From NCBI GenBank assembly GCA_965235115.1, contig OZ249440.1:7936001-8000000 (forward strand): a stretch of 64,000 nucleotides of DNA, given 5' to 3'. The stretch is from Laetmonice hystrix. Lineage: Eukaryota. The notes beneath the pieces are model-generated. The model was not told the DNA's origin. It ran no database searches and saw nothing but the letters and a program-made list of their open reading frames with translations. Below, piece by piece: positions 30,008-62,766 of this stretch (the first letter of the stretch is position 1; every line of letters begins with the position of its first letter). Both the position numbers and the translations under genes were made by a program.

Positions 30008-32645
30008 TGCCCCCCATGCACAAAGTCACAGAGACAGGGGTGGACATGAACAGAACGAGGGGTTATGGGCTGTACCGGCTATACCGGCTAGATCGTCATT
30101 ATGGGACACGTTTTCCAGGGGACAAGACTTTATCCTATGTCCCCGATGCACAAAGTCACAGAGACAGGGATGGACAAGTACAGAACGAGAGGTTATATGC
30201 TACCGGCTATATCGTCATTATGGAACACGTTTTCCAGGGGACAAAACTTTATCCCATGTTCCCCATGCACAAAGTCACACAGACAGGGATGGACAAGTAC
30301 AGAACGAGAGGTTATATGCTACCGGCTATATCGTCATTATGGGACACGTTTTCCAGGGGGCAAGACTATCCCAGTCCCCCATGCACAAAGTCACAGAGAC
30401 AGGGGTGGACAAGTACAGAACGAGAGGTTATAGGCTATACCGGCTATATCGTCATTATGGGACACGTTTTCCAGGGGGCAAGACTATCCCAGTCCCCCAT
30501 GCACAAAGTCACAGCGACAGAGGTGGACAACGAGAGGTTATATGCTATACCGGCTAGATCGTCATTATGGGACACGTTTTCCAGGGGACAAGACTATATC
30601 CCAGTCCCCCATGCACAAAGTCACAGCGACAGAGGTGGACAACGAGAGGTTATATGCTATACCGGCTAGATCGTCATTATGGGACACGTTTTCCAGGGGG
30701 CAAGACTATCCCAGTCCCCCATGCACAAAGTCACAGCGACAGAGGTGGACAACGAGAGGTTATATGCTATACCGGCTATATCGTCATTATGGGACACGTT
30801 TTCCAGGGGACAAGACTTTATCCCATGTCCCCCATGCACAAAGTCACAGAGACAGGGGTGGACAAGTACAGAACGAGAGGTTATAGGCTATAGCGGCTAT
30901 AGCGGCTATATCGTCATTATGGGACACGTTTTCCAGGAGGCAAGACTATCCCAGTCCCCCATGCACAAAGTCACAGAGACAGGGGTGGACAAGTACAGAA
31001 CGAGAGGTTATAGGCTACGGCTAGATCGTCATTATGGGACACGTTTTCCAGGGGACAAGACTTTATTCCATGTCCCCCATGCACAAAGTCACACAGACAG
31101 GGGTGGACAAGTACAGAACGACAGGTTATAGGCTATACCGGCTATATCGTCATTATGGGACACGTTTCCCAGGGGGCAAGACTATCCCAGTCCCCCATGC
31201 ACAAAGTCACAGAGACAGGGGTGGACAAGTACAGAACGAGAGGTTATAGGCTATACCGGCTATATCGTCATTATGGGACACGTTTCCCAGGGGGCAAGAC
31301 TATCCCAGTCCCCCATGCACAAAGTCACAGAGACAGGGGTGGACAAGTACAGAACGAGAGGTTATAGGCTATTCCGGCTATATCGTCATTATGGGACACG
31401 TTTTCCAGGGGACAAGACTTTATCCCATGTCCCCCATGCACAAAGTCACAGAGACAGGGGTGGACAAGTACAGAACGAGAGGTTATAGGCTACGGTTAGA
31501 TCGTCATTATGGGACACGTTTTCCAGGGGGCAAGACTTTATCCCATGTCCCCCATGCACAAAGTCACAGAGACAGGGGTGGACAAGTACAGAACGAGAGG
31601 TTATAAGCTATACCGGCTATACCGGCTATATCGTCATTATGGGACACGTTTTCCAGGGGGCAAGACTACATCCCAGTCCCCCATGCACAAAGTCACAGAG
31701 ACAGGGGTGGACAAGTACAGAACGAGAGGTTATAGGCTACGGCTAGATCGTCATTATGGGACACGTTTTCCAGGGGACAAGACTTTATTCCATGTCCCCC
31801 ATGCACAAAGTCACACAGACAGGGGTGGACAAGTACAGAACGACAGGTTATAGGCTATACCGGCTATATCGTCATTATGGGACACGTTTCCCAGGGGGCA
31901 AGACTATCCCAGTCCCCCATGCACAAAGTCACAGAGACAGGGGTGGACAAGTACAGAACGAGAGGTTATAGGCTATACCGGCTATATCGTCATTATGGGA
32001 CACGTTTCCCAGGGGGCAAGACTATCCCAGTCCCCCATGCACAAAGTCACAGAGACAGGGGTGGACAAGTACAGAACGAGAGGTTATAGGCTATTCCGGC
32101 TATATCGTCATTATGGGACACGTTTTCCAGGGGACAAGACTTTATCCCATGTCCCCCATGCACAAAGTCACAGAGACAGGGGTGGACAAGTACAGAACGA
32201 GAGGTTATAGGCTACGGCTAGATCGTCATTATGGGACACGTTTTCCAGGGGGCAAGACTTTATCCCATGTCCCCCATGCACAAAGTCACAGAGACAGGGG
32301 TGGACAAGTACAGAACGAGAGGTTATAGGCTACGGCTAGATCGTCATTATGGGACACGTTTTCCAGGGGGCAAGACTTTATCCCATGTCCCCCATGCACA
32401 AAGTCACCGAGACAGGGGTGGACAAGTACAGAATGAGAGGTTATAGGCTATACCGGCTATACCGGCTATACCGGCTATATCGTCATTATGGGACACGTTT
32501 TCCAGGGGACAAGACTTTATCCCATGTCCCCCATGCACAAAGTCACAGAGACAGGGGTGGACAAGTACAGAACGAGACGTTATAAGCTATACCGGCTCTA
32601 CCGTTTTCCAGGGGACAAGACTTTATCCCATATCCCCCATGCACG
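30008..32645. repeat. Satellite array, ~110-130-bp monomer (~22 copies) with a 722-bp higher-order duplication
   Basis: Monomer ATCGTCATTATGGGACACGTTTTCCAGGGGACAAGACTTTATCCCATGTCCCCCATGCACAAAGTCACAGAGACAGGGGTGGACAAGTACAGAACGAGAGGTTATAGGCTATACCGGCTAT. Matching ORFs lie 722 bp apart (31034/31756, 31155/31877, 31273/31995, 31391/32113). Confidence 0.95.
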
Positions 32646-41571: not shown

Positions 41572-42063
41572 CTGGAACCCAGTCAGGAACAGACCATGCC
41601 TTCATCCCTCACCATACGTCCTGGAACCCAGTCAGGAACAGACCATGCCTTCATCCCTCACCATACGTCCTGGAACCCAGTCAGGAACAGACCATGCCTT
41701 CATCCCTCACCATACGTCCTGGAACCCAGTCAGGAACAGACCATGCCTTCATCCCTAACCATACGTCCTGGAACCCAGTCAGGAACAGACCATGCCTTCA
41801 TCCCTCACCATACGTCCTGGAACCCAGTCAGGAACAGACCATGCCTTCATCCCTCACCATACGTCCTGGAACCCAGTCAGGAACAGACCATGCCTTCATC
41901 CCTCACCATACGTCCTGGAACCCAGTCAGGAACAGACCATGCCTTCATCCCTCACCATACGTCCTGGAACCCAGTCAGGAACAGACCATGCCTTCATCCC
42001 TCACCATACGTCCTGGAACCCAGTCAGGAACAGACCATGCCTTCATCCCTCACCATACGTCCT
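41572..42063. repeat. Minisatellite, 49-bp unit x10, nearly homogeneous
   Basis: CTGGAACCCAGTCAGGAACAGACCATGCCTTCATCCCTCACCATACGTC. The unit has no stop in any + frame, which produces the 175/204-aa repeat ORFs. Confidence 0.95.
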
Positions 42064-47420: not shown

Positions 47421-48008
47421 ACGTCACACGGGAGATATAGCTAACATTGGTGAGCTGGGAAACATACACACGGGAGATATAGCTAACATTGGCGAGCTGG
47501 GAAACATACACACGGGAGATATAGCTAACATTGGTGAGCTGGGAAAGATACACACGGTAGATATAGCTAACATTGGCGAGCTGGGAAACATACACACGGG
47601 AGATATAGCTAACATTGACGAGCTGGGACAGATACACACGGGAGATATAGCTAACATTGGTGAGCTGGGACAGATACACACGGGAATATAGCTAACATTG
47701 GCGAGCAGGGAAACATACACACGGGAATATAGCTAACATTGGCGAGCTGGGAAACATACACACGGGAGATATAGCTAACATTGGCGAGCTGGGAAAGATA
47801 CACACGGGAGATATAGCTAACATTGGCGAGCTGGGAAAGATACACACGGGAATATAGCTAACATTGGCGAGCTGGGAAACATACACACGGGAGATATAGC
47901 TAACATTGGCGAGCTGGGAAAGATACACACGGGAATATAGCTAACATTGGCGAGCTGGGAAACATACACACGGGAGATATAGCTAACATTGGCGAGCTGG
48001 GAAAGATA
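47421..48008. repeat. Minisatellite, 42/41-bp unit, ~14 copies
   Basis: CACACGGGAGATATAGCTAACATTGGCGAGCTGGGAAACATA, with 1-bp-deleted GGGAATATAG variants. Confidence 0.95.
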
Positions 48009-58700: not shown

Positions 58701-60422
58701 ACACGTATACAAATATATATAAAAGAAAACTCGGTGCTACTTAATGTATTTCGAGGGTGAAAGGTGGAAGTCGACATCTCCCCTTTCATGAAAAACAGAT
58801 TCTCGTTAACAAATATAATCGGCCTTCACAGTGGCAGACACAGACTGCCGATACCGGCGACATCTCCGTTATCAAGGACAACATATTTTCACTACTCCAT
58901 GCTTGGTGTTCCAACAGTACATTACGTGAACGAGATCAGCCATGTCGGAACTGTGGATACAAATCTTCAACTCAGTGCTGATATGTGTCATACCTGAGGA
59001 AAGTAACACCAGATAATAACACCGCGTAAGATAGCGAGAAATATTCTGTCAACAGATAACGAGGCGAAGATGATGTAAGAAGCAGAGAGTGTCGGCATAG
59101 GGCGCCAGGTCCCTTTAACATTGGACACGTAAGTGGGACATTGAGTCAGCGGCGCTTCCCCTCGGACTGCCACAGTGGCGTGTTGGCTGCATGTATTACG
59201 TCTGACCTCTCGTGCTCTTCCGCAGGCCGCCGCACATGATGCCATACTTCAAATTATTGGTCCCTAAATCTCTGCTATCGAACTTATCAGGGCCGTAAGC
59301 GACCAGAACGCTGAGCTGGTCTACGTGTGAGGCTACACCAGTCTCCGTGCGCATGCCCTGTGACCTCAGAGGGAAGACGTCAGAGGCATTACTCGGCAAA
59401 TAGACGCATGATTAAAACAAAGCCGCATGCAATGCTCTAAAACCTCGAAACTACCCATAGCTAACGAGGCAGACCAAGATGCTGTCTGTTGGTAAATTTC
59501 TGAGATGAATCACTGCGGGAAGCCACCCACGTCTTGCCGCAACGTGAGCCTGTTTTGACGGCTCTGGTTGACCGATCAGAGACGTTTAATGACAACCTGT
59601 CAACCTCAATTGCTTGCCGAATTCTCTCACTAGGAGGCGCTGTTTCTGAAACGTACACACCGGAAAAAAGTATCAAAAGTGCATAATTAGGAAATGGTGA
59701 TAGGACAAACAGTAAAGACGAGTATAATTCGTTATCTCGCGGCATTTAGCCTCCTGTGGGAAGGAGATCTCGTGAGAGGTGATGTTCTCGCGAGACGAAT
59801 GGCGGAGGTAGTTGGTGAGGACGTCACAGTACATTCCGCGCAGTGGTGGTGGTCTCAGGGGAAGCCCTGGTAGTGTTTATAACACGGTCAGCCCTATGAT
59901 GTGGTTAACACATGTTCGTGTTAGAAGATAGACTAAAAACAAACAAATTGGCCATGTCAGTTGTCGCCGCCGCACTCATGTGGAAATGAAGGGGAGTAAA
60001 GATCAAGCTCCGCCAACGTAATGACGAATTATCCAAAGTGGGCACAAACCACGTGTGGCTTCATTTTCTGTCACGCATGAGTGGGTGACCCTTTCCGAGT
60101 TCAAGTACGCAGAGTAACGTAACTGAGGGTCAGCAACCAGGTCGCCTTTCAATGGAGTATTTTTTAACAGCGTCGATCAAGGGTCTGCTTATATTTCAAT
60201 ATATCTTATTATAGCAAACCCATGAGGTACGAGTGTAAAACGTTGGACTGTTATCGCTGTCATTGAGCTAATACTATAGACCTTATAAACGTCTACCCTT
60301 CATGCCATCTGTATATTGATATATCTATACTCACAATTTGCTAAGCATCACAAACTATTTTGAGACTATCCTAAAAATCATGCGAAAAAAAGTCAGTGTT
60401 TTTCCATTCAAAAGCATCAGGG

Positions 60423-61056
60423 TCAGTATTCAGTATGTCCCCCTCTGGTATTCAGCATTGGTTGACAACTTCTCGTCATCCCCTGGACCAATCTCCTAAA
60501 TGTCTCTTATGGCAGATTGTCCCATTCCTCAACAAGGGATTGCCCAAGTTCTTGGAGGCTATTGGGTTGGATTGGACGGGCTGACAGTCCAGCCTGGAGC
60601 TTGTATGGGGTTAAGGTCAGGTGAGCATGCTGGTCAGTTCATCCGGTCAATTCCCTCCTCCTCTAGATATTAGGTCACCAGTCTGGCGTTATCATTGACA
60701 AGGACGAAGTCTGGACCTATTGCACCTGCATATGGTCGAACAATGGGATCCAGGACCTCATCTCTGTACAATGGGATCCAAGATCTCATCTCTGTACAAT
60801 GGGATCCAAGATTTCATTACTGTACAATGGGATCCAGCATCTCATCTATGTACAATGGGATCCAGGATCTCATCTCTGTACAATGGGATCCAGGATCTCA
60901 TCTCTGTACAATGGAATCCATGATCTCATCTCTGTACAATGGGATCCAGGATCTCATCTCTGTACAGTGGGATCCAGGATCTCATCTCTGTACAATGGGA
61001 TCCAGCATATCATTTCTGTACCGTTCTCCGGTCAGAGTCCCATTCTGGATGATGTA
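60423..61056 (-). pseudogene. Degenerate Tc1-family transposase C-terminal half (DDE region), interrupted by a self-derived minisatellite
   Basis: The minus strand reads YIIQNGTLTGERYRNDMLDPIV-[array]-YRDEVLDPIVRPYAGAIGPDFVLVNDNARLVT*YLEEEGIDRMN*PACSPDLNPIQ. After a frameshift it continues ARPIQPNSLQELGQSLVEEWDNLP*ETFRRLVQGMTRSCQPMLNTRGGHTEY*. This matches the Tc1 motifs DNA, WP..SPDLNPIE and GGHT.Y*. Confidence 0.9.
60741..61020. repeat. Minisatellite, 28-bp unit x10, derived from transposase codons
   Basis: + unit CAATGGGATCCAGGATCTCATCTCTGTA; on the minus strand TAC AGA GAT GAG ATC CTG GAT CCC ATT G (YRDEILDPI-V). Confidence 0.95.
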
Positions 61057-62766
61057 GAATAATAATGGATAAAATAAACGAATGGTCACAAGTCATGTTG
61101 GGATAAATATTTCGTTCTCAAAGGAGGAAGTTTTTTTTGCGGTTTAACAGAAAAAAATATTTCCAGCCCTTCCTACCATAAAAAGAATTCCCATCTTCTT
61201 TCTGATAAAAAAGATGGCTGGACAAAAACTCCAGACCCCCTAGACATAGATAGATAATGGTAGCCCCTCGGATACTTGGGTAACGTTTTGCAGTGACTCA
61301 GTAAACTTCTCTGATAGCGTTTCTACCCGGCCGACAGACGGAGGAGGCGTGTCGACAGACAGACATACTTGTACATGCAGCCCTGAAAATAATCACTTTA
61401 TATATTGCGTGGTGTGAGGTCATAATTTATTTCCCTCTTATTATCACCTCGCACCTGTTTTCATGTGAGTTAGCCACAAATCCTCCGATGTAGTCGAGCA
61501 GATGTTATGAGGACATGCATGAGTCCCAACTCCTGCTCAAGTTGTAGGCCATCTCACCTCCTCCTCTTGTGGCTCCTCACGTGGAACTAAACACACACCA
61601 GATTGGTGCTAAATACCATTATTATCTCCACATTAGGGACCGCAGGCACACCTTGGCACTGGGTGAGTGCCACAAAACAAAGACGTCTTTGGCGGGAAGA
61701 GCGTGCTGAGAGAGTGGGTATATGACGGCGGGGCACATCACTGTAAGCAAGGGGACACGACCGGGGCAAACAAATCTACCCCCAGATCACGTCAGATATA
61801 TACCACCCACGTTTGGCCTTCCGTGCAGGTGTTGGCAAGGAGAGACTGCGTACTGGTTCTCTCAGGCAGTTCAGGACACTTGCGTGCTTGATCGTCGTAA
61901 AAAACAGTATCTTTTACATAAAACGTGCACCAAACGGTGAAAATGTACACATGAATATCGTCACACGAGCGCGTCCATATCTGAGATAGTGGTGGGGGAA
62001 ACATGCAACTACTTATCATTAAAGTCACTTTAAACCCTAACATAAGTAAATCTATTTCTATACTACTATACATAATGATATGTATGTATTCCTAATTTGA
62101 TTCTTATCGTTTATTTGTACAGGATGGACGAGTAAATCTTTGACCAGCTCCTCTGACACGTATATTTATAATCTCACACACCGTCTCACTTAGTGATTCA
62201 GATACTCACTTAATTACTCATTCACTGACTCGCCCACGCTCACTTTCCTTCGCTGTCGCTCTCTCTTCATGTCCCGACAGAAGCAGTGTGTTTGTATACC
62301 GCAGCTATCTTCATACCTGAGTGGTCGCCATTCAACAGAGCCGCAATGACTGCTAGTAATTACCACCCGTCACTTTGAATGATGTTGTAAATATTCGCCC
62401 TTTTGGGAGGCATCAAAACACAGACAAAGGTTACTTTATACGGTCCGTATAGCGGCCCTTCAGACGGGTGGTCAACGGAGGGATGAAATGACCACTAACT
62501 GACCACAGGTACATCAGACAAACACCTGTCATGAGTTCTCATTCTAAAGATTGACCTTTTAAAACCCTTGTATAACTAACAGTCAGCTTTACCCATCTTT
62601 GTATTCATTGTCAGTTTATGAGGAAGAAAGGACTTCATGCATGAATGAATACATGTACCATCTACCATACGTACTTACATACATGGGTAAAATGTAAAAT
62701 ACTAGTACATTTATAGTATACATCAATGCAAAGAAGTAACAACTATAGGACACGTCAAGGTGCAGG

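What the first reader, a model, noticed from the sequence alone, without database searches (positions are those of the whole stretch)
60423..61056. Birth of a minisatellite caught inside a Tc1 transposase gene
The 28-bp unit is the transposase coding segment YRDEILDPI(V). Upstream, the frame reads YIIQNGTLTGER-YRNDMLDPIV; downstream, YRDEVLDPIV-RPYAGAIGPDFVL. Collapsing the 10 copies to one restores the canonical Tc1 sequence just before the second catalytic Asp (DNA motif). The ancestral ends share only a GT microhomology (CG-GTAC ... ATT-GTTC). The ancestral single-copy state can therefore be read directly, and a near-unique seed with minimal microhomology was enough to start an array. This is an internal control for how the other arrays in the window may have arisen.
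Basis: partly seen in the sequence, partly recalled or inferred. Interest (0 to 1): 0.72.

Follow-up and report, generated by a model that had tools for sequence, protein, structure and literature searches.

The report
Minisatellite grown inside dead Tc1 transposon
A 28-base piece of a long-dead, truncated Tc1-type transposon gene was copied ten times head to tail at this one place in the genome. It is a clean example of a known process in a genome full of such repeats, and it is an old array, not a newborn one.

Summary
Ten exact-length 28-bp units (60740-61019, plus 2 bp of the next unit) lie on the minus strand inside a 5'-truncated, stop-riddled Tc1-like transposase remnant (61059 down to the stop at 60423-60425).

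- A paralogous fragment on another contig has one unit with colinear, ungapped flanks.
- 538 public Tc1-type proteins match a 41-residue single-unit segment from that paralog, nearly all of the 150 listed as one stretch.
- Removing nine units in a script turns two overlapping protein matches into one ungapped match.
- The unit-to-unit junction occurs nowhere else in the 627-Mb assembly.

So the array grew in place from a single unit. The boundary microhomology is at most 2 bp, which is chance level.

Two points are overstated:
- "Birth caught" is too strong. The units differ from their consensus by 5%, about the per-lineage decay of the element itself, so the array is old.
- It is not special. 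22 minisatellites cover 15.7% of this window, and minisatellites derived from transposable elements (TEs) after insertion are already catalogued by the thousand in human.

Pfam DDE_3 does not detect the remnant directly. First-reader notes record similar transposase-derived arrays elsewhere in this genome.

The parts
60740..61019 (-). Minisatellite of 10 units of exactly 28 bp. The consensus on the minus strand encodes YRDEILDPIV in one of its three phases. Three units equal the consensus; the others carry 1-4 substitutions.
61020..61021 (-). 2-bp microhomology (GT on the minus strand) that repeats the last two bases of every unit. The paralog has AT here, so the ancestral microhomology may have been only 1 bp.
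61020..61059 (-). Upstream Tc1 coding flank (F/L-YIIQNGTLTGER). The element is 5'-truncated at 61059, so the HTH domains and the first catalytic Asp are missing.
   Evidence: tblastn with P0003, 61059-60988, E 5e-8
60426..60739 (-). Downstream Tc1 coding remnant, from RPYAGAIGPDFVLVNDNA to GGHTEY. It has in-frame stops at 60670-72, 60634-36 and 60507-09, a frameshift near 60600, a 5-codon gap after the DNA motif, and Q at the position of the catalytic Glu.
60423..60425 (-). Natural stop codon of the transposase reading frame.
60305..60422 (-). 3' untranslated or terminal part of the element, shared at about 80-90% with other fragments (L002, L004). No clear terminal inverted repeat or TA target duplication could be defined.
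61064..61267 (.). Unrelated old dispersed repeat that abuts the truncated end (71-72% identity to loci on two other contigs).

Best explanation
A Tc1-like DNA transposon copy, or a fragment of one, came to lie here and decayed. Within the dead coding sequence, one 28-bp segment (codons YRDEILDPIV, ending 16 residues before the D that aligns with the second catalytic Asp) was duplicated in tandem by an event that needed essentially no homology, with at most 2 bp at the junction. Once two adjacent 28-bp copies existed, replication slippage or unequal sister-chromatid exchange raised the number to ten. The array then aged: the units picked up about 5% substitutions. It has no coding or other evident function and is a by-product of a genome with a very high rate of minisatellite formation.

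Shown here: the anatomy, the single-unit ancestral state, the uniqueness of the array, and the minimal microhomology.
Inferred: the order of events, the molecular mechanism of the first duplication and of the later expansion, and neutrality.
For: - Array anatomy.
- The paralog at G000:C3:6089794-6089916 has one unit. It aligns to the window without gaps through the junctions and unit, at about 90% identity over 122 nt, once nine units are ignored. The array's consensus unit gives the best score.
- Only these two copies span the site in the genome.
- A 23-nt unit-to-unit junction, allowing up to 3 mismatches, occurs 9 times in 627 Mb, all inside this array.
- A 41-residue single-unit segment from that paralog matches 538 proteins at E<=1e-3, the best at 65-79% identity, nearly all of the 150 listed as one stretch.
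- P0003, P0022, P0028 and P0069 among these pass the Pfam DDE_3 cut-off.
- tblastn with P0003 hits 61059-60988 (E 5e-8) and 60768-60601 plus 60599-60426 (E 5.5e-28). The two sets of matches overlap on residues 27-37, which is the unit.
- With nine units removed, the match becomes a single ungapped stretch covering residues 14-87, E 6.6e-35.
- An intact Tc1-like ORF from the same genome also matches the downstream flank.
- Unit divergence is 14/280.
- A single unit has no hairpin potential.
- 22 arrays cover 15.7% of the window, and three other arrays tested are locus-specific.
Against: - Only two copies in this genome span the site, so the test 'other copies have one unit' has little power within the species. 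It leans on proteins from other organisms.
- The Pfam DDE_3 profile does not detect the locus.
- The array's age estimate rests on small counts (14 substitutions in the array, 12 in 122 nt between the paralogs). It also assumes equal rates and no homogenisation.
- The ancestral base at the upstream junction (G or A) cannot be polarised.
Confidence: 0.85

Rival explanations
1. The array formed in a donor Tc1 element before this copy was made and arrived here by transposition or by DNA-level duplication. It would then not be an in-place event at this locus.
For: Only two copies span the site, so a small array-bearing sublineage could have left just this copy. Both copies share Q at the catalytic Glu position and a gap after the DNA motif. 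This suggests they descend from an already defective template rather than from independent insertions of an active element.
Against: The junction 23-mer is absent everywhere else in the 627-Mb assembly. The paralog has one unit. The array's consensus unit is closest to the paralog, and it encodes YRDEILDPIV, close to the same segment in relatives such as P0022 and P0028.
Confidence: 0.07
2. The array is an assembly artefact, that is, a mis-assembled expansion of a shorter repeat.
For: Tandem repeats are a known source of assembly error (PMC6868369, title and abstract only).
Against: Seven of the ten units carry their own substitutions, in a fixed order and with no indels. That is not what collapsed or stuttered reads produce. 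The window holds 21 other arrays of the same kind.
Confidence: 0.03
3. The repeat is kept for a function, for example the 120-codon plus-strand ORF that runs through it, or a regulatory or structural role.
For: An ORF at 60695-61057 (+) is open across the whole array. A three-unit stretch of the plus strand folds slightly better than shuffled controls (z -2.8).
Against: The consensus unit has no stop in any plus-strand frame, so the ORF is a mechanical consequence of the repeat. It starts with TTG. Its Pfam hits are all below the cut-offs and none has a significant stretch. The units are drifting with no preserved frame. The array exists at one place only.
Confidence: 0.03

Closest known systems
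TE-derived tandem repeats that start and expand after an individual TE insertion (Ahmed & Liang 2012, PMC3389668; review PMC9659126)
   Same: The unit maps to an internal TE segment. Other copies of the TE carry one unit. The array is specific to one insertion, and the ancestral state can be read from TE relatives.
   Different: The host is an invertebrate genome that earlier notes of this scan call an annelid; I did not verify that. The substrate is coding sequence of a Tc1-type DNA transposon. The human survey found 7,276 TE-derived repeats. The review's table lists Tc1/mariner cases that involve MITEs, whole-element clusters such as Bari1, or a mariner found inside a satellite.
Haber & Louis 1998 model of minisatellite origin (unit flanked by 5-10 bp direct repeats), as summarised in PMC3389668
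   Same: A unique segment becomes a tandem duplication that later expands by slippage or unequal exchange.
   Different: The flanking direct repeat here is only 2 bp (possibly 1 bp). That is expected by chance in about 16% of random junctions, so the model's defining signature is missing.
[quoted passage not shown]
   Same: The array can formally be written as (GT + 26 bp) x 10 + GT, that is, with a truncated terminal unit.
   Different: The 'noncontiguous repeat' would be a dinucleotide, too short to count as evidence for that mechanism.
'Mirage' minisatellites of amphioxus, and the junction-copy arrays noted elsewhere in this genome (PMC3087553; notes s1-330509 and s1-306517)
   Same: The same genome-wide tendency to turn arbitrary local unique sequence, including functional or once-functional sequence, into locus-specific minisatellites.
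   Different: Mirages copy the exon-intron junctions of live genes. This array copies the inside of a dead transposase gene and touches no splice site.
P0023, a predicted 257-aa protein in public data made of about 4.4 tandem copies of a 59-aa Tc1 transposase segment
   Same: An independent tandem amplification of Tc1 transposase coding sequence that overlaps the same region (YRDDIL ... DDNARPH ... MDWSA).
   Different: Its unit is 177 bp and in frame, and the units are nearly identical.

Membership tests
Tc1/mariner (Tc1-like, DD34E) transposase remnant | Direct match to the Pfam DDE_3 (PF13358) profile | tested here: not met
   Six stop-free pieces of 24-47 aa gave no hit even at E<=10. The genome-wide DDE_3 search lists 115 matches at E<=10, none at this locus. 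The pieces are short and the remnant is broken, so this is low sensitivity rather than evidence against homology.
Tc1/mariner (Tc1-like, DD34E) transposase remnant | Significant colinear similarity to proteins that themselves pass the DDE_3 and Tc3-HTH cut-offs | tested here: met
   P0003 (DDE_3 42.5 bits), P0028 (DDE_3 plus HTH_Tnp_Tc3_2) and P0022 (DDE_3) match 61059-60426 at 46-62% identity, with E down to 5.5e-28, or 6.6e-35 with the array removed. An intact Tc1-like ORF of the same genome matches at E 1e-9.
Tc1/mariner (Tc1-like, DD34E) transposase remnant | Complete D,D,E catalytic triad | tested here: not met
   The first Asp region is lost to the 5' truncation at 61059. The second Asp is present (NDN aligned to DDN). 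The Glu position reads Q (DLNPIQ against DLNPIE). This is an inactive remnant.
Tc1/mariner (Tc1-like, DD34E) transposase remnant | Terminal inverted repeats and a TA target-site duplication | tested here: inconclusive
   The 5' end is missing. At the 3' end, homology to L002 and L004 fades around 60305-60350 with no recognisable terminus.
Minisatellite | Head-to-tail array of a 10-100 bp unit | tested here: met
   10 x 28 bp, 0% indels, TRF score 466.
Minisatellite (as VNTR) | Copy number varies among individuals | not testable with these tools
TE-derived tandem repeat formed after insertion | Other copies or relatives of the TE carry a single unit, and the array is confined to one locus | tested here: met
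   The paralog has a single unit. 538 relatives match the single-unit segment, nearly all of the 150 listed as one stretch. The junction 23-mer occurs only in this array.
Haber-Louis type initiation | Unit flanked by direct repeats of 5-10 bp in the ancestral sequence | tested here: not met
   Only GT is shared. In the 10 bp on either side of each boundary, 3 of 10 bases match, which is chance level.

The most novel reading that the evidence does not exclude
This genome may run an unusually active tandem-duplication process that needs no homology and seeds minisatellites from any unique sequence. Dead transposon copies, whose single-unit ancestral state can be read from relatives, would then give a genome-wide calibrated sample. 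From that sample one could measure the unit-length spectrum, the junction microhomology and the age of minisatellite 'births', which would make the old question of how minisatellites start directly testable. The present locus would be one data point: 28 bp, at most 2 bp of microhomology, and an array about as old as its host element.
Probability: 0.3. Interest if true: 0.5.

Novelty: new member of a known kind. Interest (0 to 1): 0.25.

Why it matters
Taken alone it matters little. It is a neutral repeat inside a dead transposon, of a class already catalogued in human and reviewed across eukaryotes. Its value is as a well-controlled example. Both edges of the array and the pre-duplication sequence are known, so one can say with some confidence that the first duplication needed no meaningful flanking repeat. 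That goes against the two classical initiation models for this locus. Because about 16% of this window is minisatellite, collecting all such TE-internal arrays in this genome could turn a single anecdote into a real measurement of how minisatellites begin.

Tried and rejected
- Pfam on the stop-free pieces of the remnant and on the paralog's ORFs gave no usable hit; the best was DDE_3 at E 0.3 on a paralog piece. The genome-wide DDE_3 search does not list the locus even at E<=10.
- The protein-atlas search on the 41-aa piece returned only unnamed eukaryotic clusters and a weak Transposase_1 row. It was not used as evidence.
- I looked for a third own-genome copy spanning the site. L002, L003 and L004 cover only the C-terminal and 3' part, and L003 upstream holds an unrelated 41-bp repeat.
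- I tested hairpin-driven slippage. A single unit has no structure (z +1.1). Three units fold modestly on the plus strand (z -2.8) and not on the minus strand (z -1.2). This was rejected as a driver.
- I looked for a higher-order structure or an edge-to-centre gradient. Mean differences by lag are flat (2.2-3.0), apart from 4.0 for the single pair of end units. Per-unit substitution counts fit a Poisson spread. Only three variants are shared between units.
- I could not define the element's 3' terminus or TIR.
- The plus-strand ORF through the array was rejected as a gene.
- TRF on 16 other Tc1-bearing loci found arrays in the flanks but none inside the matched transposase part.
Neither was retried by other means.

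Full report
**What is there.** TRF finds one array at 60740-61021: period 28, 10.1 copies, 91% matches, no indels, score 466. The repeat finder shows the copies in exact 28-bp register. Cut into units, the array is ten complete 28-mers (60740-61019) followed by AC, the first two bases of the unit.

On the minus strand the upstream edge reads ...FYIIQNGTLTGER|YRNDMLDPIV. The downstream edge reads YRDEVLDPIV|RPYAGAIGPDFVLVNDNARLVT*YLEEEGIDRMN*PACSPDLNPIQ. After a frameshift near 60600 it continues ...RPIQPNSLQELGQSLVEEWDNLP*ETFRRLVQGMTRSCQPMLNTRGGHTEY and ends at the stop at 60423-60425. The nine extra units add 252 bp, or 84 codons, so both flanks happen to share a frame. Every minus-strand frame still meets a TGA once per three units, so nothing is encoded across the array.

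Six stop-free pieces give no hit, and a genome-wide DDE_3 search lists 115 matches at E<=10, none at this locus. The pieces are short (24-47 aa), so I went through relatives instead.

- I searched a 41-residue segment that spans the site in its single-unit state, taken from the paralog described below, against 1.84 billion representative proteins.
- It gave 538 hits at E<=1e-3, the best at 65-79% identity.
- Four of them (P0003, P0022, P0028, P0069) pass the DDE_3 cut-off, and two of those (P0028, P0069) also pass HTH_Tnp_Tc3_2.
- In tblastn, P0003 matches the window at 61059-60988 (62% identity, E 5e-8) and at 60768-60601 plus 60599-60426 (59% and 46%, E 5.5e-28).
- An intact 355-codon Tc1-like ORF of this same genome (DDE_3 70.9 bits) also matches the downstream flank at E 1e-9.

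The remnant lacks everything upstream of 61059, that is, the HTH domains and the first catalytic Asp. It also has three in-frame stops, one frameshift, a 5-codon gap right after the DNA motif, and Q where the catalytic Glu should be. It is a dead fragment of a Tc1-like element. The unit ends 16 residues upstream of the D that aligns with DDN, which general knowledge of DD34E transposases places as the second catalytic Asp.

**Single-unit ancestral state.**

- A DNA search of the whole 627-Mb assembly with array plus flanks found one other locus, G000:C3:6089794-6089928. There the sequences left and right of the array overlap by exactly the amount expected for one unit.
- Its ORF reads GHTDLYIIQNGTLTGERYRDEILDSVVRPYAGAIGPDFV.
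- With nine units ignored, window and paralog align without gaps through both junctions and the unit, at about 90% identity over 122 nt. The array's consensus unit scores better than either edge unit.
- A protein search with the 41-aa segment finds only these two places in the genome.
- The two tblastn matches of P0003 overlap on residues 27-37, which is the unit. When nine units are removed in a script, they merge into one ungapped match over residues 14-87 (E 6.6e-35). That step was a test only: nothing was printed or saved as a repaired element, and the fragment stays truncated and broken.
- Nearly all of the 150 listed relatives match the segment as one stretch.

**Is the array unique?** A 23-nt pattern across the unit-to-unit junction does not exist in the single-unit state. 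Allowing up to three mismatches, it occurs nine times in the assembly, and all nine are the internal junctions of this array. The caveat is that this Tc1 lineage is nearly extinct here: two copies span the site, and three more fragments cover only the 3' part.

**Microhomology.** On the minus strand the upstream flank ends ...GAACGGT and every unit ends ...CCCATTGT. The downstream flank begins TCGACC and the units begin ACAGAG. Exactly 2 bp (GT) are shared, and the neighbouring ten positions match at chance level, 3 of 10 on each side. For random sequence the chance of 2 bp or more of junction homology is 1 - 9/16 - 9/32 = 0.16. The paralog has A instead of G at this synonymous Arg position, so the ancestral homology may have been 1 bp.

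PMC3389668 summarises two classical initiation models. One requires 5-10 bp flanking direct repeats (Haber & Louis). The other is slippage between noncontiguous repeats that leaves a truncated terminal unit (Taylor & Breden). Neither finds real support at this locus. A single unit has no hairpin potential. The first duplication is therefore best described as homology-independent, but the mechanism itself is inferred.

**Age.**

- The ten units carry 14 differences from their consensus in 280 bp, which is 5%. This falls to 11 events if the three shared variants are each counted once.
- Three units equal the consensus.
- Per-unit counts fit a Poisson spread, and differences show no clear trend with distance between units.
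- At every variable position but one the paralog agrees with the array consensus, so the variants are derived. The exception is position 8, where unit 6 happens to carry the paralog's base.
- The window and the paralog differ at about 12 of 122 aligned bases, roughly 5% per lineage.

Within wide error, the array is about as old as the copy itself. 'Birth caught' is therefore wrong in the temporal sense. What survives is a readable record of the ancestral state, not a nascent repeat.

**Context.** The window holds 22 minisatellites (period 10 or more, at least 3 copies) covering 15.7% of its 64 kb, about one per 2.9 kb. At that density, an array starting inside a roughly 500-bp transposon remnant is expected about one time in six. 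Three other arrays tested (49, 42 and 118 bp units) are found only at their own locus in the genome.

Earlier notes of this scan call the genome an annelid's, which I did not verify. They describe many locus-specific minisatellites in it, including two first-reader notes on transposase-derived arrays elsewhere (s1-311020, s1-337739) and the 'mirage' junction arrays (s1-330509). TRF on 16 other Tc1-bearing loci found arrays in the flanks but none within the matched transposase part.

**Comparison with what is known.** TE-derived tandem repeats that start and grow after an individual insertion are documented. The human survey counted 7,276 TE-derived repeats, of which only 159 and 300 showed the signatures of the two initiation models (PMC3389668). 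A review lists cases across eukaryotes (PMC9659126). Public protein data even hold an independent tandem amplification of an overlapping part of a Tc1 transposase (P0023, 59 aa x 4.4). This locus is a new member of a known kind.

**Limits.** No related eukaryotic genome is available in these tools.

**Verdict.** In-place growth from one unit with negligible microhomology is well supported (confidence 0.85). The array is old and ordinary for this genome. Interest 0.25.

Noticed in passing
window 1-64000: 22 distinct minisatellite arrays (period 10 or more, at least 3 copies) cover 15.7% of the window. Three of them (41572-42063, 47425-48008, 30011-32604) were searched in the whole assembly and occur only at their own locus.
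   Followed up: partly
window 60695-61057 (+): A 120-codon ORF with a TTG start runs antisense through the whole array, because the consensus unit has no stop in any plus-strand frame. Its Pfam hits are all below threshold. It is judged a mechanical ORF.
   Followed up: yes
L005 1501-1806 (G000:C3:6089641-6089946): The only paralog that spans the site is itself rearranged. The segment encoding YLEEGIDRKDWP...RPIQPN lies inverted directly upstream of the segment encoding GHTDLYIIQNG...NDNA, and the latter is joined straight to CSPDL. This may be the 'inversion junction' locus of note s1-311020, but no tandem array was found at it.
   Followed up: partly
window 60601-60603 and 60673-60690; L005 1506-1634 (-): Both copies have Q at the catalytic Glu position (DLNPIQ and DLNPTQ). 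By my reading of the sequences, both also have a 4-5 codon gap after the DNA motif relative to P0003 and P0028. Their common ancestor may already have been defective.
   Followed up: partly
protein P0023 (public data, locus unknown): A predicted 257-aa protein made of about 4.4 near-identical tandem copies of a 59-aa Tc1 transposase segment (YRDDIL...DDNARPH...MDWSA). It is an independent tandem amplification of Tc1 coding sequence in another organism.
   Followed up: no
window 61064-61267: An old dispersed repeat (71-72% identity to G000:C4:19623701-19623874 and C29:1770882-1771026) abuts the truncated 5' end of the Tc1 remnant and may mark the event that truncated it.
   Followed up: no
L023 and L025 (G000:C8:24451919-24452377, C19:12277760-12278218): A different Tc1-like family in this genome has identical uninterrupted open frames of 355 codons (the transposase starts at an internal Met) at two or more places, which suggests recent activity. 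L024 and L026 carry minisatellites (36 bp x 8.6, 39 bp x 17) within 1.5 kb of such copies.
   Followed up: no
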